Origin: Octopus sinensis
Lineage: Eukaryota
Assembly (NCBI RefSeq): GCF_006345805.1
Contig: NC_043001.1
Span: forward strand, 13,392,001 to 13,456,000
Reading direction: 5' to 3'
Length of the DNA stretch: 64,000 bases
Shown: piece by piece, positions 12,835 to 58,835 of the stretch
Layout of the letters: every line of letters begins with the position of its first letter
Numbering within the stretch: position 1 is the stretch's first letter
Made by a program: the position numbers and the translations under genes
Notes under the pieces: generated by a model
Database searches by the model: none
Told to the model about the DNA's origin: nothing
The model's input: only the letters and a program-made list of their open reading frames with translations

Positions 12835-13160
12835 GATGTTTTGCAAACAACTTTCACATTCAAGTGCTACCAGTCAAAATCTCCGCATACCGGAAGCCAG
12901 GAAGTGTATGGGATCATCAGGAGAGAATGCGCGCCGTTTCGGGGCCTACCTCTCGACGGCATCAATGCGCACCGCTTCCCCTCACTGATATGAGGCTCCG
13001 CTTGCTAGATCAGCTGTTTATCAAATAAAGCTCAATATTCTTCTAGCCGTCGCTCGTCGTCTCTTTTTAACAAAATCCTGTGGCTAGCCTTCTCCACTGT
13101 AGTTTGAATATCGGTCATGATGATATTGAATTTACGGTGAGTTAGGACTAGCGATAACAA
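12835..13160 (-). mobile_element. 3' end (ORF C-terminus plus 3' UTR) of HERO-like RLE LINE
   Basis: colinear with 36479-36805 and ends at the same point (GATGT(T/C)TTGCAAACAAC on +). Confidence 0.8.
12882..12999 (-). ncRNA. putative non-circularly permuted hammerhead ribozyme in LINE 3' UTR
   Basis: - strand UGCCGUC GAGAGG uAGGCCCC GAAACGGCG cgcau UCUCUC CUGAUGA UCCCAUAC..GUAUGCGGA; stems I and III both pair (6 bp each). Confidence 0.55.
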
Positions 13161-13670: not shown

Positions 13671-13832
13671 TAATAATAATAATGATAATAATAATAATAA
13701 TGATCATAATAATAATAATAAATAATAAATAATAATAATAATAATAATACTAATAACAATAACAACAACAACAACAACAACAACAAGAAAAACAACAACA
13801 ACAACAACTACAACAACAACAACAACAACAAC

Positions 13833-13883
<51 letters not shown>
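13671..13883. repeat. compound (AAT)n-(AAC)n-(AAT)n microsatellite
   Basis: direct reading. Confidence 0.95.
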
Positions 13884-13885
<2 letters not shown>

Positions 13886-17580: not shown

Positions 17581-18825
17581 AAAGGTAATTATGTATGAAA
17601 TGAACATGATTTTTTTAAAACAAAAATAGATAATTTTGTTGACATTAAAGGCTCTGTCCCAAAGAAAATTTGTCAGCCTTTTTTGGGGAAGAGATGGACT
17701 GCTACCGTATCATGCTTCACACAGTCGGATATAATAATAACACTAATGTTAGTCATATCACTGTTTTGTTTATAATTTCAGACAAACAGATGGATAGTGG
17801 CTTGGGTATTGTTCGCATGACATCTTGCAAGATGAATGAATAATTATCTGAGAAATCTGCTATGACTACGATGTCTCCTTCACTTAAAGATTCTTTTCTT
17901 GAAGTACAGAATTTAAATTGTTCTTTGCAGTGAAATTATGTACTTTAAGTGCTTTTGACAGAAAATTTCAATAAAATCATATGCTCATTTTGGTATATTT
18001 TCTAGGTTTGTTCTGTCTGTTGTTAGCCATTGCTTATACCGTGCTTCATCAATCATATACAGATTAACTATTTCATATAAGAAGTTTTCAAGGTCTTTCA
18101 GCAAAGAATTACGATATGAACAGTTGTCCATATATCAGTCGTTTCTTGTTGGGTTGCACGTAATTGATTCCAAACCTTGTTCATAATCAATCAAGTGATG
18201 CTTCATATCCTTAGTTAAATCAGATAGTTTCATGCCAGAAATCATTAATTTGACATTCTGATGAATGGTGCGATACACACACATTATATGTACCAGCATT
18301 CCTTTGACCTTAGCTGTACAAATTTTGAGCTCGGGGTCTTTTGATTTAAACAGCTGGAAGGCTTCCTTTAACTTAAAAGCTATGGGGTACTTTTGCTCTG
18401 TAAATGTGTTAGTTGTTAGTGTTGTCGTTATTATTATTGTTTACAGCGCTGTTCATCTTCGGTCACACTGCCTTATTGCAATATTCCATTCGTGGTAGGC
18501 CAGAGTTAACACCTACGAATTTCAATATAGCTTCTCATAAACGTATTTGGTAAAATCATGTTTTTGTACGTATCAAGGAAGAATTTACTGTCACACGAAA
18601 GCTTGGCACATCTCATGATTTCTTCTCATTTCCCGTTCAGAGGTGTCAAATACGTGTGACTATTCTATCATAAATGCTATCACTTGGCCGTCGAGTTGAG
18701 GAATATTAAACAGCTACCTCATAATATAGATGGCACTAAATTTCCTTTTTGATCGATAACGTCTTGAGCAATTATAAACATAAAAATCTCAGTGTCATTG
18801 AAGAGATAATAATAGTGCTCAAAAT

Positions 18826-18835
18826 AATAATAATA

Positions 18836-18926
<91 letters not shown>

Positions 18927-18980
18927 TAATAATAACAATAACAATAATAATAATAATAATAATAATAATGATGATAATAA

Positions 18981-19033
<53 letters not shown>

Positions 19034-19049
19034 GTAATAATAATAATAC
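18826..19049. repeat. (AAT)n microsatellite
   Basis: direct reading. Confidence 0.95.
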
Positions 19050-19526: not shown

Positions 19527-19905
19527 AAGAAGAAGAAGAAGAAGGAGAAAAGATGATGAAAGAAGAAGAAAAGAAGAAGAAGAAGAAGAAGAAGAAGAAG
19601 ATGGGGGAGAAGAAGAAGAAGGACAAAAAGAAGAAGAAGAAGAAGAGGAAGAAAAAGATGAAGAAGAAGGAGGAGAAAAAGAAGAAGAAGAAGAAGATGA
19701 TGATGATGATGAAGAAGAATAAGAAATGAAGGAGAAGAAGAAGATGATGATGATGATGAAGAAGAAGAAGAAGAAGAAGAAGGAGAAAAAGAAGAAGAAG
19801 ATGATGATGAAGAAAAGAAGAAGAAGAGAAGAAGAAGAAGAAGAAGAAGAAGAAGAAGAAGAAGAAGAAGAAGAAGAAGAAGGGGAAGAAGAAGAAGAAG
19901 AAGAA
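19527..19905. repeat. imperfect (GAA)n polypurine tract with GAT/GGA variants
   Basis: direct reading. Confidence 0.95.
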
Positions 19906-21230: not shown

Positions 21231-21253
21231 ATCTAGTGCGTGTATTTTAATAT

Positions 21254-21485
21254 ATTTCTTTATTACCCACAAGGGGCTAAACACAGAGGGGACAAACAAG
21301 GACAGACATAGGTATTAAGTCGATTACATCGACCCTAGTGCGTAACTGGTACTTAATTTATCGACCCCGAAAGGATGAAAGGCAAAGTCGACCTCGGCGG
21401 AATTTGAACTCACAACGTAACGGCAGACGAAATACCGCTAAGCATTTCGCCCGAAGTGCTAACGTTTCTGCCAGCTCGCCAACCT
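21254..21485 (-). mobile_element. SINE family B, full length
   Basis: complete head to tail, matches 40939-41164. Confidence 0.92.
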
Positions 21486-21704: not shown

Positions 21705-22604
21705 AAAAAAATTTTTTAATGACTGGAAAAGATGGAGGGAGAAGGTTTTCTTTATTGTGCACCGACAGTCTCTGTAGGCAATACGATTTAACTCAACGAT
21801 GAGGTTTTCTATTTGATTATGAATAGTCATGAATATGCTAATCGAAGCGACAGTTCATATTGAACAGATCTATTTCCATTTTTATTTTCCACTTGAAGTG
21901 TAAATATTTTCATTTCGAACACATAATAAATATTAAATCACTGTAATTAATCTTTAACGAAGGCTAGGAACGAAGGTTGTGGTGTGCTTCTCGCAAAATA
22001 AGGGAATGGTAGGCGAAATATGATCTTTTATATGATTGTGAACATATATATACACAGACAACATAAGTTTATACAATAATACGCTCAAACACATGGGTAT
22101 ACACCTATCCACAAACATGGGAGCATATATACACACACAAAGATATATATATATGTGTGTGTGTGTGTGTGCGTGTATATATATATATAAATATATATAT
22201 AGTTATATGTAAGCATGCATATACATGTATATATGTATATGCATATATATATGTGTGTTTGAGTGTATAAATATGTTTATGTGTGTATGTGTGTGAGTTT
22301 ATACATATAAAATGTGTGTGTGTGTGTGTGGTGTGTGTGTGTGTGCGCATATACATAGGCTCATAAACGCCAGCATGAATATGAGCCATTGCATGTTAGT
22401 GTGCAAGAAAAAATATACGTATTTCGCGGTATCTATTTGCACTGATGTGTAGAAGATGTCAGAAAGTTCTCTGTCTCTGAAAAATAATTTCAGAAATTAA
22501 TGAGCTATGAATTAATTTCATTCAGTAGCGCCTTAGTATTTGATTATCAAGAACATCATAACACACACACACACCCATACATATATGCATGTATATATAT
22601 ATAT

Positions 22605-22840
<236 letters not shown>

Positions 22841-23369
22841 ATATATATATATCGTTTAACTGAAATAGGAGCTTGGCACTAGAATTACCAGGAAGCATAA
22901 TGCCACGTTGAAGTCACTGAAGGCAATGGATGTTTTCTTGGTTTGTTACGTTATAAATCAAAGGTTGCTCGAGCAATGAATTCGATGTTGCCAAGAAAAG
23001 GGGCTAGAAAACCGCGAATAAAATTACAGTTTAATGGAAATGATGTAACACTATACGGTTAATTTCGTACGTTATGAATTAATAGTAGCGATAGATTTCA
23101 TCATCTTTTGATTCCAAAAGCAATGGTTTTGAAACCAGTATCTGCATAGTTTGGCGCATGTTTATGAATGAGAATGTGCAACACCAATCACATTATGTAA
23201 ACAGTTAATATCTTATGGATTATATGATTATTGGAGAATTATTTATGTGATATCAGATTTCAAGGATTACCCGAGATTCGTCAATACCTTTTCAAATTAT
23301 ATTCATAATTGATTTACCTCCTTCATACATTATTCCATTACTCCCTCCTACATATATTAATGTAATGAT

Positions 23370-23622: not shown

Positions 23623-23879
23623 TATATATATACAGAGACAGAGAGAGATGCATATATGTACGTATATATGTGTGAATGTACACAGAGTGACAGAGAGAAT
23701 GTTAATTATTATATTCTTATCTAGCTTGCATTCGTTATGGTTGATATTAATTTGGTTTGTTAATACATGCGTAAGCGGAGAAGGGATAAGGATATCATGC
23801 CAACTCGACTAGAAATGTAAGTCTACGCGGTGAAGTGCATACACACATATATTTATATGTATATGCACATATATATATA

Positions 23880-23925
<46 letters not shown>

Positions 23926-24134
23926 TACATTTATATATATACTTTATATACATATATATACATATATATATAGAAATATATATATACGTATATATGTATC
24001 ATATGTATGCTACATATATGTATGTATGCATATATGTATGCATGTATGTGTATGCGTGTATTTATAACTATTTCTCTATATCTATGCATTTATATAAATA
24101 TATATATATACATACATATATATAATATATATAA

Positions 24135-24214
<80 letters not shown>

Positions 24215-25396: not shown

Positions 25397-25747
25397 CTCT
25401 CTTTTACTCTTTTACTTGTTTCAGTCATTTGAATGAGGCCATGCTGGAGCACTGCCTTTAATCGAGCAACTCGACCCCTAACTAACGGGGACATAAGCAC
25501 ACCAGCATCGGTTGTCAAGCAATGCTAGGGGGACAAACACAGACACACAAACACACACTCGCATATATATATATACATATATACGACGGGCTTCTTTCAG
25601 TTTCCGTCTACCAAATCCACTCACAAGGCTTTGGTCGGCCCGAGGCTATAGTAGAAGACACTTGCCCAAGGTGCCACGCAGTAGGACTGAACCCGGAACC
25701 TTGTGGTTGGTAAACAAGCTACTTACCACACAGCCACTCCTGCGCCT
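25397..25747 (-). mobile_element. SINE family A (internal deletion)
   Basis: colinear with other A copies. Confidence 0.9.
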
Positions 25748-25953
25748 GCTAGTTTTTGTTTTTGTTTTTTTCCATTGCAATTCCACATTTTTGTCGGTAG
25801 CAAATGGTATGAAACAAGAAGTAATTGTTTTGGATGCTACATTTTAAACACATGTATGTAACTTTTAATAACCTAATTATAAATTCCTTGTATCACCGTG
25901 GTAATTCTGCTAAATAATTTTCGAACCAGATTTTGACTGTTTATATACATATA

Positions 25954-26124
25954 GGCGCAGGAGTGGCTGTGTGGTAAGTAGCTTGTTTACCAACAACATG
26001 GTTCCGGGTTCAGTCCCACTGCGTGGCATCTTGGGCAAGTGTCTTCTGCTATAGCGCCGGGCCGACCAATGCCTTGTGAGTGGATTTGGTAGACGGAAAC
26101 TGAAAGAAGCCTTTCGTATATATG

Positions 26125-26184
<60 letters not shown>

Positions 26185-26393
26185 GTGTGTCTGTGTTTGT
26201 CCCCCTAGCATTGCTTGACAACCGATGCTGGTGTGTTTACGTCCCAGTCACTTAGCGGTTCGGCAAAAAAGAGACCGATAGAATAAGTACTGGGCTTACA
26301 AGGAATAAGTCCCGGGGTCGATTTGCTCGACTAAAGGCGGTGCTCCTGCATGGCCGCAGTCAAATGACTGAAACAAGTAAAAGATTAAAGAGT
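25954..26393 (+). mobile_element. SINE family A, full length
   Basis: GGCGCAGGAGTGGCTGTGTGG head to GAAACAAGTAAAAGA tail. Confidence 0.92.
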
Positions 26394-27054
26394 AATATAT
26401 ACATATATATAGATAAATACATAGATACATGTGTACGTACATACACACACATACATATTTACATACACACATGCGCACTCACATTCATACGTAGTATGTA
26501 CGTATGTATACATGTGTGTGTATCTGTGTCTCTGTCGAGATATGTGTGTGTGTGTATATATATGCATATATTCTTTTACTCTTTCCCTATTTCCACCGCG
26601 AGATCTATGACCATATATGGGCATTGCTGTTAGTTTTGCAGCACTTTCGTTATTCGAAGATCTCCTCTGATGCGTGGAATTTGATGAGAGAGGGCGTTTG
26701 AAGTTGCTACCCTCAGTTGCATCTGCCGCGGGGACGGTAAATCCGGAACACTTGACAGAAGGAGATTCAGTTTTCATTTGAATACACAAGTATCCACCCT
26801 GTATAGTTCTCATGATTTTATGGCAGTCATTGACATTCTGTAGGCCCTTGAAACCCAACATATGGCGGTGAAATATATAATTTCCCATTCTTACTTTGGA
26901 ATAACATATAATTCAGTCATACGCTGGTGTCAGTTACTAAACATAATATAATATTGACATTACAGTTTCAATCTCATTCTGAGATTTAATAATGCTTACT
27001 GTCAGTTTTTCGAAATCAGTGGCAGACGTCACTAGAAAAACTCTTATATATTTG

Positions 27055-27290: not shown

Positions 27291-28119
27291 CTTCTATACT
27301 TTACAATATTGACATTAGAATAATGAAAAGTAAGTATACCACAATCGTGTTTGTACAATGCAGCTCAGTGTTGCAACATCCAATGCGTCTTCTATGATTA
27401 GACAACAATAATATTTTGTATATTCATTTGGAAATGAAATACCAGTTAAAATGTTAATGTGAGCTACAGCTAATCTCTATATATCTCGACTACAAGTGAA
27501 ATGAATATGTATTAACGAGTGTTGCAAAATATTAGTTTACATACTTAACGTTATTTCGAAATATGCATAACTATATTTTCTAAATGATATGAAAGTGAGA
27601 AATGAGAATTATCTCGAGGCTTTTACTTTTACTAATATTGCAAGATTTTTTAGATATATTCTTACACTTGGAAAGCAAAAAGGAGATATGAATAAATATT
27701 ACACTGTTTATGGAATGATTTCGATTTCCTTGAAAGTCAAATAAGTACATTTATTTTGAATGTTGGTATATCAGTAAATTTGTATACAAACTTAACTTGA
27801 AATTTGTTTGTATTTGATTATTGTGTTGTTTTGAACGTAAGTTGCAGATAAGGAGATCATTCTAGAAGGAAACAGTAAATAAAGTAAATAAATGCCTCGG
27901 AAAACTCTAACTAACAAAAAAACAGTGAACCATTTGTGCTACAGATGTAATTTAAAAGCTTAAAACGTAAATTCCTTTCCTTTTTAACTCTGCTACGACC
28001 TGCAACATCGGAGATGGTTTCAGAACAACTTGCCAATGTCAGTTAAGGATCCCAATCTTTAACAGCCATGTATGAAAACTGGACTTAACTTGATTTAGAC
28101 ACCGACATAAATAGTATAT

Positions 28120-28281
28120 GGCGCAGGAGTGGCTGTGTGGTAAGTAGCTTGCTTACCAACCACATGGTTCCGGGTTCAGTCCCACTGCGTGGCATCTTGA
28201 GAAGGTGTCTTCTACTATAGCCTTGGGCTGACCAAAGCCTTGTGAATGGACTTGGTAGACGAAACAGAAAGACGCCCGTCG

Positions 28282-28375
<94 letters not shown>

Positions 28376-28605
28376 GTGTGTGTATATGTTTGTGTGTCTG
28401 TGTTTGCCCCCTCCCCTAGCATTGCTTGACAACCGATGCTGGTGTGTTTAGGTCCCCGTAACTTAGCGGTTCGGCAGAAGAAATCGATAGAATAAGTACT
28501 AGGCTTAGAAAGCATAAGTCCTGGGATTCAGTTTGATCGACTAAAAGCGGTACTCCAGCATGGCCGCAGTCAGATGACTGAAACAAGTAATAAGAGTAAA
28601 AGAGT
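28120..28605 (+). mobile_element. SINE family A, full length, expanded internal (TA)n
   Basis: colinear with 25954 copy. Confidence 0.92.
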
Positions 28606-29057
28606 CACCCAATTTAAAAATAACTTTTAAGAAATACAGAATACAAATTTTCCAATCATTTCCAATTGAAATGCATATCTCTTCTAGAAGGTATTTTTTA
28701 AATTATGATCCAAACACTTCTAACCGATATTTGTGTGTGTATGTATGTGTGTATAGTGTATGTGCATATTTATATGCATAGGTATGCATCTATATATTCA
28801 TATATATGTATGTGTTTTTACTATTTTTCGTATTCCAGCCTCAAAGCCGTGGCTAAGTTGGGATATTTCATTTGGACTCATACATCGTTTCTTTATTAGC
28901 CACAAGGGCCCAAAGTAGAGGGCAACACACAAGGGCAGACAGGTCACCACAGAGGGGACAATACATAAAATGAATATAAATGAGATGATTATATAACAAT
29001 GAGGTTATGAGTGGCTGCATGTGCCCCTCATCACATGCATTACCTGTTTCTCTTTCT

Positions 29058-29284
29058 ATTTCTGTACTACCCACAAGGGGCTAAACATAAAGAGGACAAA
29101 CAATGAGAGACAAACGGATTGCGTCGATTACATCGACCCCAGTGCATAGCTGGTACTTAATTTATCGACCTCGAAAGGATGAAAGGCAAAGTCTTCCTCG
29201 GCGGAATTTGAACTCAGAACGTATCGGCGGATGAAATAAGCCTAAGCATTTCGCCCGGCGTGCTAAAGTTTCTGCTCGCCGCCT
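29058..29284 (-). mobile_element. SINE family B
   Basis: matches other B copies. Confidence 0.88.
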
Positions 29285-30397: not shown

Positions 30398-31075
30398 ATT
30401 CAAATATCGGTTGTATACATATTTATTTATGTGAACGAGAGCAAGTGACAAGCAAAAGCATATTTGAAACGACATCGTGAAGAAAATAAATATGTGGTTT
30501 TCATTGATCTAGAATGTTTCAGGTTAAAAAGATGTGAGCAATAAATAATTCTGTAATTTTAATTTTCTAATTTACTCAGGATATAGCATGACAAAGTGTG
30601 TGTGTGTGTGTGTGTAAGGCAACGGAAGTTAACCATATCAAAAGTACAAATATAAGCACATAGAAATTTGTAACAATTCCAAATTTACATAAATTTCAAT
30701 ATATTAATTAGAAAAGAGATAATAAATAACTAAATAATCGTAAGATATATTCGGAAACAAATATTTTGTTTTCGAATATATAGGTTGTGTTAAGTACAAA
30801 CTACAAATAAAATAACATACGAATATTGAACAGAAATTTAAATTTTTGTGGCATCGAATTAACATGAATTCATTCATTGGTACACAACGCATTAAATCTT
30901 ACGAAATGTAATATACGAGACGGTAAATGCATTCAAATCATTTTTAGCAATAAGATGTATTGTATCGTTTCACATGAGTTAACAAAATCGCGGTTTTGTA
31001 ACTAAATATTTTTGTATATTGCACCGAGAAATAAGGTTGGAAAATTTTCAATCACAAAAATATCTATTCTAGCTA

Positions 31076-31778
<703 letters not shown>

Positions 31779-32193: not shown

Positions 32194-32580
32194 TTTATAT
32201 GTAACATATACATATATATATGTATGTAAACACAGTATATACATATATATGTATATATATATATATACACAGATATATATTTATATACAGATATATAGGT
32301 CTATATATGTGTATATATATGCATATATATATATGTATATATATGTGTATATATATATATATATATATGTATATGTATATATATACACACACACACACCT
32401 ACATGCATGCGTTTCTCTCTCTGTTTCACTCCCACTCTCTATTTGTATGTGTGCATCATAGTGTGTATACACACATGTATAACATATATACTCATGTATA
32501 TACATGTGCATATATACATACATATGTATACGTACATACATATATATATATAAATATATATATACATATATATATATATA
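32194..32580. repeat. imperfect (TA)n-rich microsatellite (left flank of array)
   Basis: direct reading. Confidence 0.9.
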
Positions 32581-32806
32581 TAATTAATCAATATAGGGTG
32601 GCAAAAAATTTTGTAGAATTTTTTTGCCACCAGCGGCCTAGTGGGAAAAAATTAAATAGTCATAGACCATTTTTAAGTTCAACATCACAATCAAGGAACG
32701 GCCATAATAGGCCATTCACCCACTAGAAATAACAGCCAAAAGCTTCAACCGCAAAATAACATCAATTCCGTAAACCAGGAGAAAATCAAAAAACATTTAC
32801 CCTGTA

Positions 32807-32913
32807 ATTTCTTATACGATGCACCGTTTCATCTACTGTTTAATGGTAAACTAACCTGATTAAATTAAATCAAGCCAATCTACCATAGGCCCTTAGATTC
32901 ATCAGTAAGAAAT
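32807..32913 (-). ncRNA. type I hammerhead ribozyme (inverted-arm copy)
   Basis: reverse complement of + copies; predicted cleavage between 32815 and 32814. Confidence 0.85.
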
Positions 32914-33580
32914 AGCCAAGTCGGAACAGATATTTTTCACGAGGCATTCCCGTCCCTGCCTCGGCAATATCTGACCTAAAATTTTCAAATCATCGCACTC
33001 GCGCCAAATTTATCGGCAGCAAATAAATATAAGCCGCCGATTCCATTACGGAATTAACCAGAAAATTCATAATTAATCAATATAGGGTGGCAAAAAATTT
33101 TGTAGAATTTTTTTGTCACCAGCGGCCTAGTGGGAAAAAATTAAATAGTCATAGACCATTTTTAAGTTCAACATCACAATCAAGGAACGGCCATAATAGG
33201 CCATTCACCCACTAGAAATAACAGCCAAAAGCTTCAACCGCAAAATAACATCAATTCCGTAAACCAGGAGAAAATCAAAAAACATTTACCCTGTAATTTC
33301 TTATACGATGCACCGTTTCATCTACTGTTTAATGGTAAACTAACCTGATTAAATTAAATCAAGCCAATCTACCATAGGCAAAAAAATTCTACAAAATTTT
33401 TTGCCACCCTATATTGATTAATTATGAATTTTCTGGTTAATTCCGTAATGGAATCGGCGGCTTATATTTATTTGCTGCCGATAAATTTGGCGCGAGTGCG
33501 ATGATTTGAAAATTTTAGGTCAGATATTGCCGAGGCAGGGACGGGAATGCCTCGTGAAAAATATCTGTTCCGACTTGGCT

Positions 33581-33685
33581 ATTTCTTACTGATGAATCTA
33601 AGGGCCTATGGTAGATTGGCTTGATTTATTTAATCAGGTTAGTTTACCATAAATAGTAGATGAAACGGTGCATCGTATAAGAAAT
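33581..33685 (+). ncRNA. type I hammerhead ribozyme copy 1
   Basis: AUUUCUUA-CUGAUGA-AUCUA..UAGAU-GAAAC-GGUGCAUC-GUA-UAAGAAAU; two 1-nt deletions in stem II region; cleavage after 33677. Confidence 0.85.
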
Positions 33686-34067
33686 TACAGGGTAAATGTT
33701 TTTTGATTTTCTCCTGGTTTACGGAATTGATGTTATTTTGCGGTTGAAGCTTTTGGCTGTTATTTCTAGTGGGTGAATGGCCTATTATGGCCGTTCCTTG
33801 ATTGTGATGTTGAACTTAAAAATGGTCTATGACTATTTAATTTTTTCCCACTAGGCCGCTGGTGGCAAAAAAATTCTACAAAATTTTTTGCCACCCTATA
33901 TTGATTAATTATGAATTTTCTGGTTAATTCCGTAATGTAATCGGCGGCTTATATTTATTTGCTGCCGATGAATTTGGCGCGAGTGCGATGATTTGAAAAT
34001 TTTAGGTCAGATATTGCCGAGGCAGGGACGGGAATGCCTCGTGAAAAATATCTGTTCCGACTTGGCT

Positions 34068-34174
34068 ATTTCTTACTGATGAATCTAAGGGCCTATGGTA
34101 GATTGGCTTGATTTAATTTAATCAGGTTAGTTTACCATTAAACAGTAGATGAAACGGTGCATCGTATAAGAAAT
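34068..34174 (+). ncRNA. type I hammerhead ribozyme copy 2
   Basis: intact core and stems; cleavage after 34166. Confidence 0.88.
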
Positions 34175-34555
34175 TACAGGGTAAATGTTTTTTGATTTTC
34201 TCCTGGTTTACGGAATTGATGTTATTTTGCGGTTGAAGCTTTTGGCTGTTATTTCTAGTGGGTGAATGGCCTATTATGGCCGTTCCTTGATTGTGATGTT
34301 GAACTTAAAAATGGTCTATGACTATTTAATTTTTTCCCACTAGGCCGCTGGTGACAAAAAAATTCTACAAAATTTTTTGCCACCCTATATTGATTAATTA
34401 TGAATTTTCTGGTTAATTCCGTAATGGAATCGGCGGCTTATATTTATTTGCTGCCGATAATTTGGCGCGAGTGCGATGATTTGAAAATTTTAGGTCAGAT
34501 ATTGCCGAGGCAGGGACGGGAATGCCTCGTGAAAAATATCTGTTCCGACTTGGCT

Positions 34556-34662
34556 ATTTCTTACTGATGAATCTAAGGGCCTATGGTAGATTGGCTTGAT
34601 TTAATTTAATCAGGTTAGTTTACCATTAAACAGTAGATGAAACGGTGCATCGTATAAGAAAT
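34556..34662 (+). ncRNA. type I hammerhead ribozyme copy 3
   Basis: intact core and stems; cleavage after 34654. Confidence 0.88.
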
Positions 34663-35043
34663 TACAGGGTAAATGTTTTTTGATTTTCTCCTGGTTTACG
34701 GAATTGATGTTATTTTGCGGTTGAAGCTTTTGGCTGTTATTTCTAGTGGGTGAATGGCCTATTATGGCCGTTCCTTGATTGTGATGTTGAACTTAAAAAT
34801 GGTCTATGACTATTTAATTTTTTCCCACTAGGCCGCTGGTGGCAAAAAAATTCTACAAAATTTTTTGCCACCCTGTATTGATTAATTATGAATTTTCTGG
34901 TTAATTCCGTAATGGAATCGGCGGCTTATATTTATTTGCTGCCGATAAATTTGGCGCGAGTGCGATGATTGAAAATTTTAGGTCAGATATTGCCGAGGCA
35001 GGGACGGGAATGCCTCGTGAAAAATATCTGTTCCGACTTGGCT

Positions 35044-35150
35044 ATTTCTTACTGATGAATCTAAGGGCCTATGGTAGATTGGCTTGATTTAATTTAATCA
35101 GGTTAGTTTACCATTAAACAGTAGATGAAACGGTGCATCGTATAAGAAAT
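35044..35150 (+). ncRNA. type I hammerhead ribozyme copy 4
   Basis: intact core and stems; cleavage after 35142. Confidence 0.88.
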
Positions 35151-35532
35151 TACAGGGTAAATGTTTTTTGATTTTCTCCTGGTTTACGGAATTGATGTTA
35201 TTTTGCGGTTGAAGCTTTTGGCTGTTATTTCTAGTGGGTGAATGGCCTATTATGGCCGTTCCTTGATTGTGATGTTGAACTTAAAAATGGTCTATGACTA
35301 TTTAATTTTTTCCCACTAGGCCGCTGGTGGCAAAAAAATTCTACAAAATTTTTTGCCACCCTGTATTGATTAATTATGAATTTTCTGGTTAATTCCGTAA
35401 TGGAATCGGCGGCTTATATTTATTTGCTGCCGATAAATTTGGCGCGAGTGCGATGATTTGAAAATTTTAGGTCAGATATTGCCGAGGCAGGGACGGGAAT
35501 GCCTCGTGAAAAATATCTGTTCCGACTTGGCT

Positions 35533-35638
35533 ATTTCTTACTGATGAATCTAAGGGCCTATGGTAGATTGGCTTGATTTAATTTAATCAGGTTAGTTTAC
35601 CATTAAACAGTAGATGAAACGGTGCATCGTATAAGAAT
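35533..35638 (+). ncRNA. type I hammerhead ribozyme copy 5
   Basis: intact core; one A missing in 3' strand of stem I; cleavage after 35631. Confidence 0.82.
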
Positions 35639-35756
35639 TACAGGGTAAATGTTTTTTGATTTTCTCCTGGTTTACGGAATTGATGTTATTTTGCGGTTGA
35701 AGCTTTTGGCTGTTATTTCTAGTGGGTGAATGGCCTATTATGGCCGTTCCTTGATT

Positions 35757-35760
<4 letters not shown>

Positions 35761-35833
<73 letters not shown>

Positions 35834-36361: not shown

Positions 36362-36478
36362 ACGAACTGGCAGAAACGTTAGCATGACGGGCAAAATGCT
36401 TAGCGACATTTCGTTCGTCTTCGGGATCTGAGTTCAAATTCTGCCGTGGTCGACTTTGCCTTTTATCCTTTCGGGATC
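36362..36478 (+). mobile_element. SINE family B head, apparently interrupted by the LINE fragment that follows
   Basis: B head to TTCGGGATC; B-like continuation AGCATTGAGGTTGACGCAATCGACT at ~37078-37108. Confidence 0.7.
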
Positions 36479-37075
36479 GATGTCTTGCAAACAACTTGCA
36501 CATGCAAGTGCTACCAGTCAAACACTCCGCATACCGGAAACCAACAAGTGTATGGGATCATCAGGAGAAAATGCGCGCCGCTTCGGGGCCTACCTCTCGA
36601 CGGCATCAATGCACAGCCCACCCCCCTCATTGATATGAGGCCCCGCTTGCTACATCAACTGGTAATCAAACAAAGTTCAATATTCTTTTAGCCATCCCTC
36701 ATCGTCTCTTTTTAACCAAATCCAGTGGCTAGCCTTCTGCACTGTAGTTTGGATATCGGTCATGGTGGTATTGACTTTACGATGAGTTAGACCTAACGAT
36801 AACAACAGTCGTCTCACACTGTGTCCAGTTAACCCTCTACATCCGACTTCGATTGGAAAATGCTCTGCTTTCCAGCCTGCGTCTTCACATTCCTCGAGGA
36901 GGTTTACATTACGGTCAATCTTTCGAGCCCGAGCGGCGTCCATATTATATTCATGAGGAACCGTTAACTCGATTAGATTTACAACTTTCCTTCTTTCACA
37001 CCACATCAAAACGTCTGGGTTTTTTGTAACTGGGATGGGAAAGAATCCCTGGCACCCAGGTAAATCTGCACCATT
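36479..37075 (-). mobile_element. HERO-like RLE non-LTR retrotransposon 3' fragment
   Basis: ORF 36677-37009 extended upstream reads DL..FFPIPVTKNPDVLMWC..IELTVPHE..A..K..GW..FPIEVGCRG (RLE domain), followed by 3' UTR. Confidence 0.8.
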
Positions 37076-37776: not shown

Positions 37777-37974
37777 CTTTTACTCTTTTACTTGTTTCAG
37801 TCATTTGATGTGGCCATGCTGGATAACCGCCTTTTTTAATCCTGCAAATCTACCCTAGGAGGTATTCTTTGGAAGCCTAAAACTTATTCTATCTGTCTCG
37901 TTTGCCGAACCGCTAAGTTCGGTTGTCAAGCGATGTTTGGGGTACAAACACAGACACAAATACACACACACACG

Positions 37975-38036
<62 letters not shown>

Positions 38037-38190
38037 CACGACGGGCTTCTTTCGGTTTCAGTCTACCAAATCCACTCACAAGGCTTTGGTCGACCCGAGG
38101 CTATAGTAGAAGTCACTTGCGCGAGGTGCCACGCAGTGGGACTGAACCCAGAACCATGTGGTTGGTAGGCAAGCTACTTACTACATAACC
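37777..38190 (-). mobile_element. SINE family A
   Basis: colinear with other A copies. Confidence 0.88.
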
Positions 38191-38872
38191 AAACACTCTT
38201 ACGTTGATTTTGTCAACATATCATTTCCCTCAAGTTACTGGAGTGCATTCCAAATCGTTTGAGTCGAGTGAGGTCTTGCGTTCTCTTGTTGCAGAAAAGC
38301 TCGCTTTCTGTTAACGATTCCTGGCTATATTGTTGTCGCACAATGGTCTAAATCCACTCCAAATGTTAGCTATATAGATTGGCATGGACGCTTCGGTTGT
38401 CAGAAACGAAAGCGTTGAGAATTATTCCCTAAAATTTCTACCAAACGCAGAGAGTCAACTTGCGTTCGAAATGTCCACGTTCGGTGACATGCTTCGGAAT
38501 TGGCCTTTGCTTAACCACTGCTTATGCAGGTTAGGATTCCTGTGGAATCAACGTGGAATCAAAGAACTTGCAGAAATATGGTGGCTTCAAATGATGGAAC
38601 CGGACGCAATTAGAGGAGGCATTTGTTATAACTTGACGAATAATGAAGGTAAGTTACCAAAATATTGCAAAACATTTGAATCAATACAAGAGATTTGTGT
38701 CAATAAATTCCGACAAAATATTCCTATCGTTATCCGGAGTAGCATACATACTTAAGTGCTTATATGGGCAAACACACGTTGGATTGAAAGTAAAGCTTGT
38801 AAAGCACCCAGAAATTGGTGTTCTCGCTTTTTGGTAAACACTGTTCTGTTATAGTGATAATAAAAGTAAATA

Positions 38873-39045
38873 GGCGCAGGAGTGGCTGTGTGGTAAGTAG
38901 CTTGCTTAAGAACCATATAGGTCCGGGTGCAGTCCCACGGCGTGGCACCTTGGGCAAGTGTCTTCTACTATGTAGCCTTGGGCTGACCAAAGCCTTGTGA
39001 CTGGATTTGGTAGACGGAAACTAAAAGAAGCCCATCGTATATATG

Positions 39046-39078
<33 letters not shown>

Positions 39079-39328
39079 TTGTGTCTGTGTATGTGTGTGT
39101 TTGTGTTGGTGCGTCTGTGTTTGTCCCCCCAACATCACTTGACAACCGATGGTGGTGTATTTACGTCCCTGTAACTTATCGGTTCGGCAAAAGAAACCGA
39201 TATAATAAGTACTGGGCTTAAAAAACAAAAGTCCTGGCGTCGATTTTCTCGACTAAAGGCAGTGCTCCAGCATGGCCACAGTCAAATGACTGAAACAAGT
39301 AAAAGAGTAAAAGAGTAAACAAAAGAGT
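38873..39328 (+). mobile_element. SINE family A, full length
   Basis: head to (GTAAAAGA)n tail. Confidence 0.9.
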
Positions 39329-40938: not shown

Positions 40939-41164
40939 TAAGGCGGCGAGCTGGCAGAAACGTTAGCGAAATGCTTATTCGTATTTCGTCTGCCGTTACG
41001 TTCTGAGTTCAAATTCCGCCGAGGTCGAGTTTGCTTTTCATCCTTTTGAGGTCGATAAATAAAGCACCAGTTACACACTGGGGTCGATGTAATCGACTTA
41101 ATCCCTTTGTCTATCCTTGTTTGATCCCTCTATGTTTAGCCCCTTGTGGGCAATAAAGAAATAT
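40939..41164 (+). mobile_element. SINE family B inserted in Gypsy 3' LTR with 14-bp TSD
   Basis: ATTATTCCATTCGT at 40925-40938 and 41165-41178. Confidence 0.92.
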
Positions 41165-41239
41165 ATTATTCCATTCGTCACGTGGAAGTGGTATAAATTA
41201 TTACTTATTCTCTAAATCATCTCCTCCTTTTATGTTTTT

Positions 41240-49652: not shown

Positions 49653-50112
49653 AATATATGTGTGTGTGTGTGTATGTGTTTGCGTGTGTGTATCTGTGAT
49701 TGACAAACGAGGAAAATGAGCGCTCAACAACGCATTGGTGGATATTTCTTTGTTTGTGAATTAAAGTTACCATTCGTTTCATGATATGAAATATGTCCTA
49801 GTGTCTTAATGAGACGGTTTGCCACCTCTCTCAATGTGATGGGCTTGAAAATTTGTTAAGACACTGGGATATTTTCTTATTTTTCGTAACATGAAGCAAA
49901 TAAAGAAATTATATCCACCAATGCAGTGTTGAGCACTCATTTTCATCATTCCATATTTACGTACTAAATCTTCCAACATCAACAAACAACAGTTAATCAC
50001 AGAAAACGAACAGAGAATCCAAAAAAACCATAGAAAGCACGAAATAATGACATTACTGAAATATAAATACGTGTGTGTATGTGCGCGCTCTCATGTTCGT
50101 TCATATATATAT

Positions 50113-50339
50113 TTCTTTACTAGCCACAAGGGGCTAAACACAGAGAGGACAAACAAGGACAGACAAACGGATTAAGTCGATTACATAGACCCCAGTGCAC
50201 AACTGGTACTTAATTTATCAAGCCCGAAAGGATGAAAGGCAAAGTGGAGCTCGGCAGAATTTGAACTCAGAACGTAACGGCAGACGAAATACGGCCACGC
50301 ATTTCGCCCGGTGTGCTAACGTTTCTGCCAGCTCTGCCA
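50113..50339 (-). mobile_element. SINE family B with 18-bp TSD
   Basis: GTTCGTTCATATATATAT at 50095-50112 and 50340-50357. Confidence 0.92.
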
Positions 50340-50930: not shown

Positions 50931-51109
50931 TAGAAAAAAAGGCTATCTTTATTTCTTCTTTTGCTGGTTAAATCAGTGTTTCCCAAATGGTGGGGCCTGT
51001 GGGACGGTCGTACAAGCTGTTTTGAGAAAACACCGTCCATTGGACGGGGGGCGTTTTGCTCGCATATATAAATATATATAACAGTTTCTATCCCAGTCAG
51101 TCATCCCGG

Positions 51110-51856
51110 TTTTCAAACAGGGAAACAGATCCCTCGCACTCAACTATCGCCCAATCTCACTCACCTCCCACATCAATAAAGTGTTTGAAAGAGTGTTAAG
51201 ATCAAGGATAGCTGACTTCTTGGAGACCCACAAACTCCTAAATGCAAATCAGCATGACTTTTGTTGTGGCAGGGACTGTCTAACACAGCTCTTACACCAC
51301 ATTGAAGATGTACTCAAAGCCTTGGGAACAGGTTCGAACTCTGATGTCATATATCTTGACTTCAGTAAAGCGTTCGACAGGGTAGACCATAATATCCTAC
51401 TCTCAAAATTGGCAAATGTTGGAATCCGTGGAAAAGTTCTACACTGGATTAAGTATTTCCTGGCAAATAGAACACAACATGTTGTAGTTGATGGAGTCCA
51501 CTGAAGCGCAGCAAATGTCACCAGCGGTGTCCCCCAGGGGACTGTCTTGGGTCCGCTACTCTTCATAATTTACATAAAAGACCTTTCCAGTGTCGTACGT
51601 TACTGCAAAGTGAAAATATTTGCTGATGACACTAAGCTCCAACAAATCGTCAATGAAGAAGCAGACCGAACTCAACTCCAGTCTGATCTATATGCTGTGA
51701 GTCAATGGGGGGACAGAAGCAAAATGCAACTGAACGACGGAAAAATTGAGCTGATACATTTTGGAAGAAATTCCTCACTAAAACAGCCATACTTTCTTCC
51801 TTCAGGGGAACCGCTCACAGCCTCTAACAATATCAGAGACCTGGGTGTAATTGTGT
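51110..51856 (+). pseudogene. CR1-like LINE reverse transcriptase fragment
   Basis: NYRPISLT..YLDFSKAFDRV..(TGA 51502)..SGVPQGTVLGPLLF..FADDTK..DLGV in one frame; truncated at microsatellite. Confidence 0.9.
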
Positions 51857-51879
51857 GTATATATATATATATATTATAT

Positions 51880-51930
<51 letters not shown>

Positions 51931-54257: not shown

Positions 54258-55835
54258 ATGTTTGACTTTTGCTTTATATTTGTACAAGTTGGCTCCAAGT
54301 CTCACCCAGAGACCTCAAGAGACAACAGGGTTGGAAGTTCATGTTGTTGTTATGCCTAGTGTGCCATATATTTTGGGGGTGGGGATGTTGTACTAATGAA
54401 TGTCTAAATAAAAAAGGTTTTTTTTTTTTTTTTTAAACCGAAAATTATGTTTGTTTTAAACCTTGAGATTACATAGAGAGTATTTTGCGTAGGATATGAG
54501 CAGTTCCCATGAGCACTATCTTTTGAACTTCTGCCATTTTGGGGTTTCCTGGTATCTGAGTTAGGTAGCTATCAGCAAATCCAGGTTTTTACAGATTACC
54601 CAGTGAATATATTGTGCAGCTCTATCGTGCCTGTTGAGATACTCTGTAGGCGCTAGAAGACTGCACTTGGAGACCACATGGTCAATGGTTTCATTTTGTT
54701 GCTTGCATACACGACACGTTGGACTGCTTCTGATCTTTAATATGTTGGCCTGGTAGTTTCTTGTTGGTAGGCATTGATCTTGAGCTGCTATGATAAACCC
54801 CTCTGTTTCAGATTTTAAGCCAGAGGCCATTAGCCATTGATGGGTCAGGGCTTTGTCGATATCTGCATTATTCGCTCTCTTTGGGTATTTGCCATAGAGA
54901 GGTTTTTCTTGCCATTTATTATTCAGAATATCTAAGGCCGCAGTTTTGGCACGGGTTTTCATGCGCCTAGCTTTTTCTGTGCTTGTTTCTTGTATATCTA
55001 TCTCTAATTCCGAAATTGGTTGTATTCGGAATTCACTTAGATATTCTTTTGTCTGTTTTGTGACTGAGTATGATGCTTTCTTGTTTTCATGTTTTGAGAC
55101 AAGTTTTAACATCCAGTCCTCAGAGTCTTTCAGGTAGGTGTCTAGGCCAATTGTAGCAATCTTCATTGTTATTGCCAGTTGCAAAAGACCACGTCCTCCC
55201 TCTTTTCTTGGCAGATAGAGTCGTTCTGTATCTGCCTTAGGGTGGTGCATTCTATGCATTGTGAACAGTTTCCTTATTTTTCTGTCGAGCTGACATATTT
55301 CAGTAATTGACCAGTTAACAATATTGAAACTGTAAGTCACGACTGGTATAGCTAATGCATTGATTGCTTCGATCCTGTTTCTTGCATTCAGCTCTGTCGT
55401 GAGTATTGCTCTCACTCTTCGATAGCATTCTCTCCTGATCCTTTCCTTCATCTCTGAATGCCTTATTCCGTTCCCTTCAATTACCCCTAGGTACTTGTAG
55501 CTCTCCGCTGGGTCTAGTTCTTTTATGACATTCTGTTGGTCAAGGTTAACGTTAGATGTTTCTGTCATTTTTCCTTTGATAAAGGTAGCCTTTGCACATT
55601 TATCGAGGCCGAATTGTATTCTGATGTCGTCACTGAATTGTTTGACTATCGCTAGTAAGCCCTTGAGTTGTTGATCATTTTTTGCAAAAATCTTTAAATC
55701 ATCCATGTAAACGAGATGATTTATATTTTTATCAAACATTTTATACCCGTACTGCGCGTCATTGAGCAGCTTTGAGAGAGGTATTAAGGATAAACAAAAG
55801 AGGAGTGGTGACAGTGAGTCACCCTGGAAAATGCC
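54258..55835 (-). mobile_element. 5'-truncated R4/Dong-like LINE with RLE core deleted
   Basis: CGIFQGDSLSPLLF..HLVYMDDLKIF..CRVCKQQNETIDHVVSKC; jumps from KNLDL to ADSYLTQIPGNPK..GTAHILRKILSM* at ~54578. Confidence 0.88.
54561..55739 (-). pseudogene. R4/Dong-like ORF remnant (RT C-terminal half, thumb, CCHC), 392 aa open
   Basis: ORF track; YMDD catalytic motif and CCHC knuckle. Confidence 0.88.
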
Positions 55836-55865
55836 ACACGAAATTTGGTCTTATTATTATTATTA

Positions 55866-58772: not shown

Positions 58773-58835
58773 TCTCTTTTACTCTTTTACTTGTTTCAGT
58801 CATTTGACTGCGGCCATGCTGGAGCACCGCCTTTA
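58773..58835 (-). mobile_element. SINE family A 3' tail fragment
   Basis: near-exact match to A tail. Confidence 0.85.

What the first reader, a model, noticed from the sequence alone, without database searches (positions are those of the whole stretch)
32580..35761. Retrozyme-like array: 489-bp non-coding unit with one intact type I hammerhead per unit
Seen: about 6.5 nearly identical units. Each reads AUUUCUUA-CUGAUGA-AUCUA-[insert]-UAGAU-GAAAC-GG-UGCA-UC-GUA-UAAGAAAU: perfect 8-bp stem I, full conserved core, 5-bp proximal stem II, 4-bp stem III with palindromic UGCA loop, and a GUA triplet. Predicted cuts after 33677, 34166, 34654, 35142 and 35631 would release 489/488/488/489-nt monomers. 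Known: animal non-LTR retrozymes are tandem hammerhead repeats whose transcripts self-cleave into monomers that circularise and are reinserted by borrowed RTs; described animal examples are generally shorter, with compact stem II. Inference: an undescribed or poorly described cephalopod retrozyme family, young given near-identity of the units.
Basis: partly seen in the sequence, partly recalled or inferred. Interest (0 to 1): 0.93.

Follow-up and report, generated by a model that had tools for sequence, protein, structure and literature searches.

The report
Hammerhead-ribozyme tandem repeat (animal retrozyme) insertion
A 3.2-kb non-coding repeat of 489-bp units, each carrying a complete self-cleaving hammerhead RNA motif, sits inside a (TA)n microsatellite as two head-to-head arrays; it is a new example of the known animal "retrozyme" elements, and its layout looks like a copy-and-paste insertion by a borrowed reverse transcriptase.

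Summary
Window 32580-35761 carries 6.5 units of a 489-bp non-coding repeat that are over 99% identical. It is not one array. About 1.6 units (32580-33379) lie on the minus strand and 4.9 units (33377-35761) on the plus strand. They are joined head-to-head at a 3-nt microhomology, and both outer ends abut (TA)n.

There are six complete type I hammerhead motifs, five on the plus strand and one on the minus strand. The chance expectation is about 0.003 per window.

Rfam hammerhead models do not detect the motif, even on 131 nt. The likely reasons are a 68-nt helix II arm and an A10.1-U11.1 pair. Folding predicts that activity is favoured as a double hammerhead through a 12-bp palindromic helix III.

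The best reading is a non-LTR retrozyme insertion made by target-primed reverse transcription from both DNA strands at an AT-rich site, in the manner of Penelope-like elements.

Self-cleavage, circular RNA, other genomic copies and covariation could not be tested. A cephalopod origin is plausible (the nearest LINE relative is from Octopus sinensis) but not proven. The unit size is within the known range (pDo500 about 500 bp; retrozyme consensuses up to 972 bp). Verdict: a new member of a known kind, of moderate interest.

The parts
32510..32582 (.). Left flank: (TA)n-rich microsatellite, the presumed target. The last 3 nt (32580-32582, ATA) could belong either to the repeat or to the element.
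   Evidence: TRF rows 32478-32582; sequence
32580..33379 (-). Inverted array of 1.6 units on the minus strand. Read 5'->3' on the minus strand it covers unit positions 413-489, then 1-489, then 1-235. Its 5' end is truncated at the central junction and its 3' end abuts (TA)n.
   Evidence: blastn of the unit against the window; inverted repeats I1-I11
32807..32913 (-). Complete type I hammerhead on the minus strand (helices 8/5/4 bp). The cut is predicted 3' of the base at + coordinate 32815.
33296..33379 (-). Truncated hammerhead on the minus strand. Only the 3' part is present, from inside helix II to the 3' strand of stem I. CUGAUGA is missing, so it is not functional alone.
   Evidence: sequence; GAAACGGTGCATCGTA match at 33304; no CTGATGA
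33377..33379 (.). Head-to-head junction of the two arrays, a 3-nt overlap (GGC) shared by both. It corresponds to complementary 3' ends (...GCC and ...GGC) of two minus-sense cDNAs.
   Evidence: blastn coordinates overlap at 33377-33379; sequence; the cDNA interpretation is inferred
33377..35761 (+). Forward array of 4.9 units: unit positions 189-489, four full units, then 1-131. Its 5' end is truncated at the junction and its 3' end abuts (AT)n with AT microhomology.
   Evidence: TRF period 488, 99% matches, score 4693
33581..33685 (+). Hammerhead 1 on the plus strand, cut after 33677. Compared with the consensus, this copy has two 1-nt deletions and one C>U change in the helix II arm. One deletion lies in the terminal loop. 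The other two changes are at positions that are paired in the predicted fold: the 3' end of the 19-bp distal hairpin, and a lone G-C pair inside the internal loop.
34068..34174 (+). Hammerhead 2 on the plus strand, cut after 34166; consensus sequence.
34556..34662 (+). Hammerhead 3 on the plus strand, cut after 34654.
35044..35150 (+). Hammerhead 4 on the plus strand, cut after 35142.
35533..35638 (+). Hammerhead 5 on the plus strand, cut after 35631. A 1-nt deletion in an A run of the 3' strand of stem I leaves 6 bp.
34838..34872 (+). One copy of a 12-bp hairpin found in each unit (GGUGGCAAAAAA / UUUUUUGCCACC, unit positions 184-218). The 5' end of the plus array falls 5 nt inside its 5' arm.
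   Evidence: self-complementary blastn hits at unit 184-218; MFE structures
35760..35833 (.). Right flank: (AT)37 microsatellite, the presumed other half of the target.
   Evidence: TRF 35760-35833, 97% matches

Best explanation
This locus is one fairly recent insertion of a non-autonomous, non-coding retroelement of the animal non-LTR retrozyme kind. Its 489-nt unit carries one type I hammerhead ribozyme.

Proposed working, with the status of each step:
1. The array, or its source array, is transcribed as a multimer (inferred).
2. [quoted passage not shown]
3. The 4-bp helix III is weak on its own, and its 12-nt sequence ACGGUGCAUCGU pairs with itself. Cutting is therefore predicted to work best as a double hammerhead between two copies in a multimer, and to be disfavoured in the monomer, which would protect a circle (thermodynamic prediction).
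4. A host RNA ligase closes the monomer into a highly base-paired circle (inferred from the family).
5. A reverse transcriptase from an autonomous element, most likely a Penelope-like element with a GIY-YIG nuclease, nicked both strands of a (TA)n tract. It primed cDNA on plus-polarity retrozyme RNA from both DNA ends and copied several unit lengths each way.
6. The two cDNAs annealed through the complementary ends ...GCC and ...GGC. This gave two 5'-truncated arrays joined head-to-head, with both 3' ends in (TA)n (architecture shown; mechanism inferred).
For: - The motif is complete and far beyond chance: six copies against 0.003 expected. The core is CUGAUGA...GAAA with A15.1-U16.1 and A17.
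- The active fold lies only 1.9 kcal/mol above the MFE of the isolated 107-nt motif.
- Two copies cofold into a textbook double hammerhead with an unpaired core and a 12-bp intermolecular helix III: -81.1 kcal/mol against 2 x -33.8.
- The monomer is 37% GC and 60% paired. Its MFE is -148.5 kcal/mol for one genomic copy (-155.7 for the consensus) and its z-score is -5.8.
- No ORF longer than 55 aa.
- Architecture: both arrays are 5'-truncated at a shared GGC, and both 3' ends sit in (TA)n with 2-3 nt of AT microhomology.
- PLEs are described as inserting preferentially in (TA)n-type microsatellites, as tandem arrays with an inverted 5'-truncated copy upstream (PMC8557442).
- Retrozymes are proposed to be PLE-dependent or PLE-derived (PMC7229834; 2026 preprint).
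- Only one polarity carries a ribozyme, and no other ribozyme class matches.
Against: - No Rfam hammerhead model matches, even at E<=10 on 131 nt.
- The 10.1-11.1 pair is A-U rather than the highly conserved G-C. Helix II carries a 58-nt insert, and no canonical loop 1-loop 2 contacts can be recognised. Catalytic competence is therefore unproven.
- The nearest-neighbour MFE of a single motif pairs core bases U4-G8 with CAUCG, and gives helix III a probability of about 0.03.
- No second locus, homologue or transcript could be found, so there is no covariation, no proof of mobility and no proof of expression.
- No PLE reading frame was seen among the window ORFs tested. The RTs present are LINE-type.
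- No target-site duplication can be read inside a microsatellite.
- Variant 188A is shared by one minus unit and one plus unit. That does not fit simple rolling-circle copying of one homogeneous circle.
- A LINE RT with twin priming would give the same architecture.
Confidence: 0.7

Rival explanations
1. This is a hammerhead-bearing satellite or minisatellite, like Dolichopoda pDo500 or newt satellite 2. It grew in place by unequal crossing-over or replication slippage. The inverted part comes from a DNA-level inversion, not from retrotransposition. The ribozyme only trims transcripts.
For: - The unit size matches pDo500 (about 500 bp), whose transcripts are processed to monomers (PMC2837043).
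- Variant 221G is shared by two adjacent units, and other variation exists within the array, as local duplication would give.
- No other copy occurs in 64 kb.
- The boundary between satellites and retrozymes is acknowledged to be blurred (2026 preprint discussion).
Against: - There are only 6.5 units, embedded exactly in a (TA)n tract.
- Both arrays have different 5' truncation points that meet at a 3-nt microhomology, and their 3' ends show AT microhomology to the flank. That is the signature of twin target-primed reverse transcription.
- An in-place inversion would not be expected to put both unit 3' ends at the outer borders.
Confidence: 0.12
2. The array is a fragment of an autonomous Penelope-like element, namely tandem pseudo-LTR sequence with its hammerhead. 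It is not an independent non-autonomous family.
For: - PLE pseudo-LTRs carry type I hammerheads.
- PLE insertions show the same tandem/inverted layout in (TA)n (PMC8557442; PMC4209133).
- Xenopus retrozymes are sister to PLE pLTRs.
Against: - The unit repeats as a whole every 489 bp with no RT/EN reading frame between copies.
- PLE hammerheads are usually minimal, with helix III of 0-2 bp. Here helix III has 4 bp plus a tetraloop.
- No PLE coding sequence was found in the window ORFs tested.
Confidence: 0.1
3. The hammerhead-like motif is catalytically dead or coincidental, and the repeat is an ordinary tandem repeat with no RNA function.
For: - Rfam models are silent.
- The 10.1-11.1 pair is A-U and helix II is very long.
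- The single-motif MFE prefers an inactive pairing.
- There is no covariation evidence.
Against: - The chance expectation is 0.003 per window for a much weaker motif.
- All 11 invariant core bases are intact in all six complete copies, together with the A15.1-U16.1 pair and H17.
- Mussel retrozyme hammerheads without canonical loop contacts still cleave (PMC7229834).
- Natural compensatory changes occur at 10.1/11.1 in pDo500.
- The double-hammerhead fold is the cofold MFE.
Confidence: 0.08

Closest known systems
Metazoan non-LTR retrozymes (Cervera & de la Pena 2020, PMC7229834: coral Acropora, mussel Mytilus, axolotl)
   Same: - Tandem non-coding repeats of a few hundred bp.
- One type I hammerhead per unit.
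- GC below 45%.
- Highly self-paired monomer.
- No LTRs.
- Palindromic helix III/loop 3 that allows a dimeric mode.
- The mussel hammerheads also lack the canonical loop 1-loop 2 nucleotides.
   Different: - The unit is 489 nt, against about 170-400 nt in that paper. It is within the 51-972 bp range of the 2026 preprint.
- Helix II is a 68-nt arm (5 bp, an internal loop, then a 19-bp hairpin) instead of about 4 bp plus a loop.
- The 10.1-11.1 pair is A-U.
- Helix III has 4 bp rather than 1-2.
- Rfam does not detect it.
- Expression and circles are not shown here.
- The head-to-head layout in (TA)n is not described in either retrozyme paper.
Dolichopoda cave-cricket pDo500 satellite hammerhead (Rojas et al. 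2000; PMC2837043)
   Same: - Repeat unit of about 500 bp with one hammerhead.
- Both single- and double-hammerhead modes have been proposed.
- G.U pair in stem III.
- Natural variation at 10.1/11.1.
   Different: - pDo500 is a major satellite (about 5% of the genome), and its hammerhead is compact (49 nt).
- Here there is a 6.5-unit island with an insertion signature and a 107-nt hammerhead.
- There is no sequence relationship.
Penelope-like elements and their pLTR hammerheads (PMC4209133, PMC8557442, PMC11167929)
   Same: - Type I hammerhead.
- Tandem arrangement with an inverted 5'-truncated copy upstream.
- Preference for (TA)n or AT-rich targets.
- An enzyme that primes from both DNA strands.
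   Different: - There is no RT/GIY-YIG reading frame here.
- PLE hammerheads are mostly minimal and lack helix III.
- The 30-40 bp PLE 'tail' cannot be recognised.
Double hammerheads of newt satellite 2 and avocado sunblotch viroid (own knowledge; summarised in PMC6155905)
   Same: Helix III is weak in the single motif. Two tandem copies form an extended helix III that gives the active form.
   Different: In those cases helix III has 1-3 bp. Here it has 4 bp, so single-motif activity is also possible. The viroid replicates RNA-to-RNA, whereas this element is encoded in DNA and has a ribozyme in one polarity only.
L1 twin priming (Ostertag & Kazazian 2001; own knowledge)
   Same: The insertion consists of an inverted 5'-truncated segment joined head-to-head, at microhomology, to a direct 3' segment. 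This is explained by priming from both nicked target strands.
   Different: There is no poly(A). Each arm is a multimer of a short unit. The target is (TA)n rather than TTTT/A.

Membership tests
Hammerhead ribozyme, type I | Conserved core C3 U4 G5 A6 N7 G8 A9 ... G12 A13 A14 | tested here: met
   CUGAUGA and GAAA are intact in all six complete copies.
Hammerhead ribozyme, type I | A15.1-U16.1 pair and a non-G base (H17) 5' of the cleavage site | tested here: met
   GAAA-C...G-U-A|U. The triplet is GUA. GUA occurs in some natural hammerheads (PMC1636495 abstract).
Hammerhead ribozyme, type I | Three helices around the core, with helix I open-ended | tested here: met
   Helix I 8 bp, proximal helix II 5 bp, helix III 4 bp (one G.U) plus a UGCA loop. 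Base-pair probabilities are 0.5-0.94 for helix I and 0.85-0.99 for helix II, but only 0.03 for helix III in a single motif.
Hammerhead ribozyme, type I | G10.1-C11.1 pair (highly conserved but not absolute) | tested here: not met
   The pair is A10.1-U11.1. Conservation is stated in PMC4209133. Natural compensatory changes at these positions occur in pDo500.
Hammerhead ribozyme, type I | Match to a curated covariance model (the hammerhead families of Rfam release 15) | tested here: not met
   No hammerhead hit at gathering score, at E<=10 on 3.5 kb, or at E<=10 on 131 nt. The likely causes are the 58-nt insert in helix II and the non-consensus helices. I could not test this, because custom sequences cannot be scanned.
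Hammerhead ribozyme, type I | Tertiary contacts between loop 1 and loop 2 | tested here: inconclusive
   An 8x8-nt internal loop lies 5 bp into helix II, and an internal loop follows the 8-bp helix I in the monomer fold. No canonical nucleotides could be recognised. Mussel hammerheads also lack them and still cleave.
Hammerhead ribozyme, type I | Covariation that preserves the helices among homologues | not testable with these tools
   No homologue outside the array was found. Of the three changes within the array in the helix II arm, one is in the terminal loop. The other two are at predicted paired positions. There is no compensatory change.
Hammerhead ribozyme, type I | Site-specific self-cleavage | not testable with these tools
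   This needs in vitro transcription.
Metazoan non-LTR retrozyme | Tandem repeat of a few hundred bp, detected by TRF | tested here: met
   Period 488, 4.9 copies, 99% matches, plus 1.6 inverted units.
Metazoan non-LTR retrozyme | [quoted passage not shown] | tested here: met
   Five consecutive plus-strand units. Hammerhead MFE is -33.8 kcal/mol. Whether that pipeline's rnabob descriptors would accept the long helix II is unknown.
Metazoan non-LTR retrozyme | No protein-coding capacity | tested here: met
   Longest ORF 55 aa and longest stop-free stretch 60 aa. No protein-database match.
Metazoan non-LTR retrozyme | Low GC (below 45-50%) and no LTRs | tested here: met
   GC is 36.9%. The only repeat structure is the unit itself. 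PBS and PPT were not examined.
Metazoan non-LTR retrozyme | Monomer RNA predicted to be stable and highly self-paired | tested here: met
   MFE -148.5 kcal/mol and z -5.79 against 100 dinucleotide shuffles. 60% of bases are paired. The minus polarity has a similar z (-5.57), so the signal is not strand-specific once composition is controlled.
Metazoan non-LTR retrozyme | Expression as linear and circular monomer RNA | not testable with these tools
   No transcriptome access.
Metazoan non-LTR retrozyme | Multiple dispersed genomic copies, and PLEs present in the same genome | not testable with these tools
   There is no other copy in the 64-kb window. No PLE frame was found among the tested ORFs. 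The source genome is not searchable here.
PLE-type insertion signature | AT-rich or (TA)n target; tandem copies with an inverted 5'-truncated copy upstream | tested here: met
   The flanks are (TA)n at 32510-32582 and 35760-35833. The inverted 5'-truncated 1.6-unit array lies upstream of the direct array. Described for PLEs in PMC8557442 and PMC11167929.
PLE-type insertion signature | [quoted passage not shown] | tested here: inconclusive
   Both ends run straight from unit sequence into (TA)n. In a multimer of one short unit a tail cannot be told apart from a partial unit.

The most novel reading that the evidence does not exclude
The unit may represent a hammerhead/retrozyme lineage, possibly the first from cephalopods, whose 68-nt helix II arm and A10.1-U11.1 pair hide it from Rfam models and probably from descriptor pipelines. 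If so, retrozyme diversity is under-counted. This locus may also be the first described genomic footprint of a retrozyme integrated by priming from both target strands in a (TA)n tract. That would link retrozyme mobilisation directly to the double-strand cleave-and-extend activity recently shown for a Penelope-like enzyme.
Probability: 0.35. Interest if true: 0.5.

Novelty: new member of a known kind. Interest (0 to 1): 0.38.

Why it matters
If the ribozyme is active, the locus adds a lineage to the animal retrozymes, probably from a mollusc or cephalopod. Its hammerhead departs from the canonical metazoan type I design in three ways: a very long helix II, an A-U pair at 10.1/11.1, and a 4-bp palindromic helix III. 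It also shows that current covariance models miss such variants.

The more useful point is the architecture. Two 5'-truncated arrays joined head-to-head by microhomology inside a (TA)n tract is the product expected if a Penelope-like enzyme nicks and extends both strands on retrozyme RNA. That gives a concrete signature that can be searched for genome-wide to test who mobilises retrozymes. None of this changes the known picture of retrozyme biology; it extends it.

Tried and rejected
- **Rfam.** I scanned the whole window at gathering score, 3.5 kb at E<=10 and 131 nt at E<=10. No ribozyme family matched. The only hits were microsatellite-driven miRNA look-alikes and weak hairpin hits.
- **Other copies in the window.** A sensitive blastn of the unit found none.
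- **Public DNA collections.**
  - An exact 25-mer from the 3' half of the hammerhead gave 0 hits in metagenome and viral contigs.
  - The degenerate pattern CTGATGAATCTA-N45-70-TAGATGAAAC gave 1 metagenome, 5 prokaryotic-genome and 1 viral hit.
  - That is roughly the number I estimated by hand from the size of the genome collection (about 2), all lack helices I and III, and I rejected them as unrelated.
- **Protein route to other copies.**
  - An exact look-up of the 42-aa ORF found nothing.
  - A homology search with a 60-aa conceptual peptide also found nothing.
- **Organism identification.**
  - The LINE RT fragment gave only about 60% identity to proteins from cnidarians, fish and shrimp.
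  - The LINE endonuclease ORF gave Octopus sinensis at 56% as a clear best hit, and a 68% hit from the unnamed assembly GCA_024449705.1. This is suggestive only.
- **PLE coding sequence in the window.** Pfam on 14 candidate frames showed only LINE-type RT and APE domains.
- **Foldback assembly artefact.** I consider this unlikely, because the two arms do not mirror each other at the junction (unit position 413 meets unit position 189). Raw reads are still needed to settle it.
- **Viroid-like or HDV-like RNA replicon copy.** I judge this unlikely, because there is a ribozyme in one polarity only and the sequence is DNA-encoded.
- **Strand-specific structure signal.** The plus strand folds 40 kcal/mol better than the minus strand. 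After composition-matched shuffling the z-scores are equal (-5.8 and -5.6), so I do not use this as evidence.


Full report
**1. What is in the sequence**

Window 32580-35761 holds 3,183 nt built from one 489-bp unit. Tandem Repeats Finder reports 33377-35761 as 4.9 copies of period 488 with 99% matches.

The repeat finder and a blastn of one unit against the window show that 32580-33379 is the same unit in reverse complement. I number the unit from the first base after the predicted cut.
- The minus-strand part reads unit 413-489, then 1-489, then 1-235.
- The plus-strand part reads unit 189-489, then four full units, then 1-131.

So two arrays lie head-to-head. Their truncated 5' ends meet at 33377-33379 (GGC, shared by both). 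Their 3' ends abut the flanking (TA)n tracts at 32510-32582 and 35760-33833's counterpart, 35760-35833. At the outer borders, 2-3 nt (ATA on the left, AT on the right) could belong to either the unit or the microsatellite.

No other copy of the unit exists in the 64 kb.

**2. The hammerhead motif**

Each complete copy reads 5'-AUUUCUUA CUGAUGA AUCUA [58 nt] UAGAU GAAA CGG UGCA UCG U A | UAAGAAAU-3'. Its features are:
- an 8-bp open helix I;
- a full core;
- a 5-bp proximal helix II;
- a helix III of A-U, C-G, G-C and G.U closed by UGCA;
- A17 at the cleavage site.

Predicted cuts fall after 33677, 34166, 34654, 35142 and 35631, giving monomers of 489/488/488/489 nt.

I wrote a descriptor scan (core, helix I >=5, II >=4, III >=3 bp, helix II arm up to 110 nt). 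It finds five plus-strand copies, one minus-strand copy (32807-32913), and nothing else in the window. In 300 random windows with the same dinucleotide content, the mean was 0.003 hits. None was as strong as 8/5/4 bp.

The second minus-strand copy (33296-33379) is cut inside helix II by the junction. The fifth plus-strand copy has a 1-nt deletion in stem I.

**3. Departures from the canonical motif**

No Rfam hammerhead family matches, at gathering score, at E<=10 on 3.5 kb, or at E<=10 on only 131 nt.

The motif differs from the canonical metazoan type I design (helix I 6 bp, helix II 4 bp with interacting loops, helix III 1-2 bp, G10.1-C11.1; PMC4209133) in three ways:
- Helix II is a 68-nt arm: 5 bp, an 8x8 internal loop, then a 19-bp hairpin with five G.U pairs.
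- The 10.1-11.1 pair is A-U.
- Helix III has 4 bp.

These differences probably explain the Rfam result, but I could not test that. They leave catalytic competence open.

Two precedents soften the concern. Mussel retrozyme hammerheads lack the canonical loop nucleotides and still cleave (PMC7229834). Compensatory changes at 10.1/11.1 occur naturally in the cave-cricket pDo500 hammerhead (PMC2837043).

**4. Folding**

For an isolated 107-nt motif, the hammerhead-competent fold is -31.9 kcal/mol and the MFE is -33.8. The MFE pairs core bases UGAUG with CAUCG, and helix III has a pairing probability of only about 0.03.

The 12 nt ACGGUGCAUCGU pair with themselves (12 bp, -17.5 kcal/mol). Two motifs cofold, as the MFE, into a double hammerhead with unpaired cores and an intermolecular helix III: -81.1 against 2 x -33.8 kcal/mol.

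This predicts the behaviour known from newt satellite 2, avocado sunblotch viroid, PLE hammerheads and pDo500: cleavage in multimers and stability of the monomer.

The monomer has these properties:
- 37% GC;
- 60% of bases paired, in a branched fold;
- helix I brings the two ends together;
- MFE -148.5 kcal/mol for one genomic copy, with z = -5.8.

The minus polarity has an equal z-score (-5.6), so the structure signal is not strand-specific.

**5. Coding capacity and variation**

The longest ORF in the array is 55 aa and the longest stop-free stretch is 60 aa.

The 6.5 units differ by 10 events in 3,183 nt.
- All five indels are 1-nt deletions in short A or T runs. They may be sequencing errors, and they include the one in stem I of the fifth hammerhead.
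- Substitution 188A is shared by one minus unit and one plus unit.
- Substitution 221G is shared by two adjacent plus units.

This fits a heterogeneous multimeric template, or later gene conversion, better than rolling-circle copying of one circle. I leave the point open.

**6. How the insertion most likely arose**

Both arrays are copies of the plus (hammerhead) polarity. The 3' ends of the corresponding minus-sense cDNAs would be ...GCC (complement of unit 189-191) and ...GGC (complement of unit 413-415). These ends are complementary to each other.

That is what twin priming predicts: cDNA synthesis primed from both nicked target strands, each stopping at a different point, and the two cDNA ends annealing by microhomology.

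The published description of Penelope-like elements fits closely:
- an insertion bias for microsatellites such as (TA)n;
- tandem copies with an inverted 5'-truncated copy upstream (PMC8557442);

PLEs are the proposed helpers, and possibly the ancestors, of animal retrozymes. Neither retrozyme paper mentions inverted arrays or microsatellite targets, so this layout is a small new observation.

It is inference from one locus. A LINE RT using twin priming cannot be excluded, and three LINE fragments lie in the window.

**7. Comparison with what is known**

The element meets all the testable criteria of a metazoan non-LTR retrozyme. [quoted passage not shown]

Its size is not exceptional. The 2020 paper quotes about 170-400 nt, but pDo500 is about 500 bp and the 2026 preprint reports consensuses from 51 to 972 bp.

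The following could not be tested:
- self-cleavage;
- circular RNA;
- dispersed copies;
- covariation;
- presence of PLEs in the genome.

**8. Source organism**

One LINE RT fragment has only about 60% identity to proteins from assorted animals.

The LINE endonuclease ORF at 62057-63289 has an Octopus sinensis protein as its clear best hit: XP_036369725.1, 56% identity, E 1.7e-130. A 68% hit follows from the unnamed assembly GCA_024449705.1, and then there is a sharp drop to 40%.

A cephalopod source is plausible but not shown.

No searchable paper links hammerheads or retrozymes with cephalopods.

**9. Verdict**

This is a real and well-formed feature. I read it as a recent retrozyme insertion with an atypical, long-armed type I hammerhead and a PLE-like double-primed architecture. 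It is a new member of a known kind.

Interest is moderate. The catalytic and circular-RNA steps remain to be shown, and the family-level claims need a genome-wide search.

Noticed in passing
window 1748-2151, 25399-25747, 25950-26395, 28115-28605, 31069-31404, 37777-38191, 38872-39319 (partial copy at 58773-58836): A dispersed family of about 400 bp, SINE-like and on both strands, 73-92% identical between copies. Each copy carries an internal TG/TA microsatellite. Many of the window's microsatellites belong to this element.
   Followed up: partly
window 2164-2278, 4535-4720, 12074-12265, 12270-12451, 21248-21481, 29056-29275, 36363-36481, 40943-41168, 50107-50339: A second short dispersed repeat family of about 190-230 bp, 75-92% identical, on both strands. 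ARAGORN finds no tRNA-like gene in the window, so a tRNA-derived head is not evident.
   Followed up: partly
window 51082-51888 (+), 54564-55850 (-), 62042-63999 (+, runs off the window end): Three LINE-type retrotransposon fragments. Two carry RVT_1 domains, one of them with zf-RVT. The third is an apparently open APE-endonuclease frame with the start of an RT, whose closest named relative is an Octopus sinensis protein (56% identity).
   Followed up: partly
window 12835-13160 and 36479-36805: A pair of 327-bp direct repeats, 88% identical and 23.6 kb apart. Both contain a CTGATGA that is not part of a hammerhead. Their nature is unknown.
   Followed up: no
window 34838-34872 and the equivalent position in every unit (unit 184-218): A 12-bp hairpin (GGUGGCAAAAAA/UUUUUUGCCACC) is conserved in each unit. 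Both 5' truncation points of the two arrays fall at the 5' base of a strong hairpin: this one, and the helix II arm of the hammerhead. That may reflect where the RT stopped, or it may be coincidence.
   Followed up: no
window 13671-13884, 18823-19048, 19527-19905, 22593-22851, 23847-24214: Unusually long simple repeats, which make the window very rich in microsatellites: (TAA)71, (AAT)75, (AAG)128, (ATAG)65 and (AT)185.
   Followed up: no
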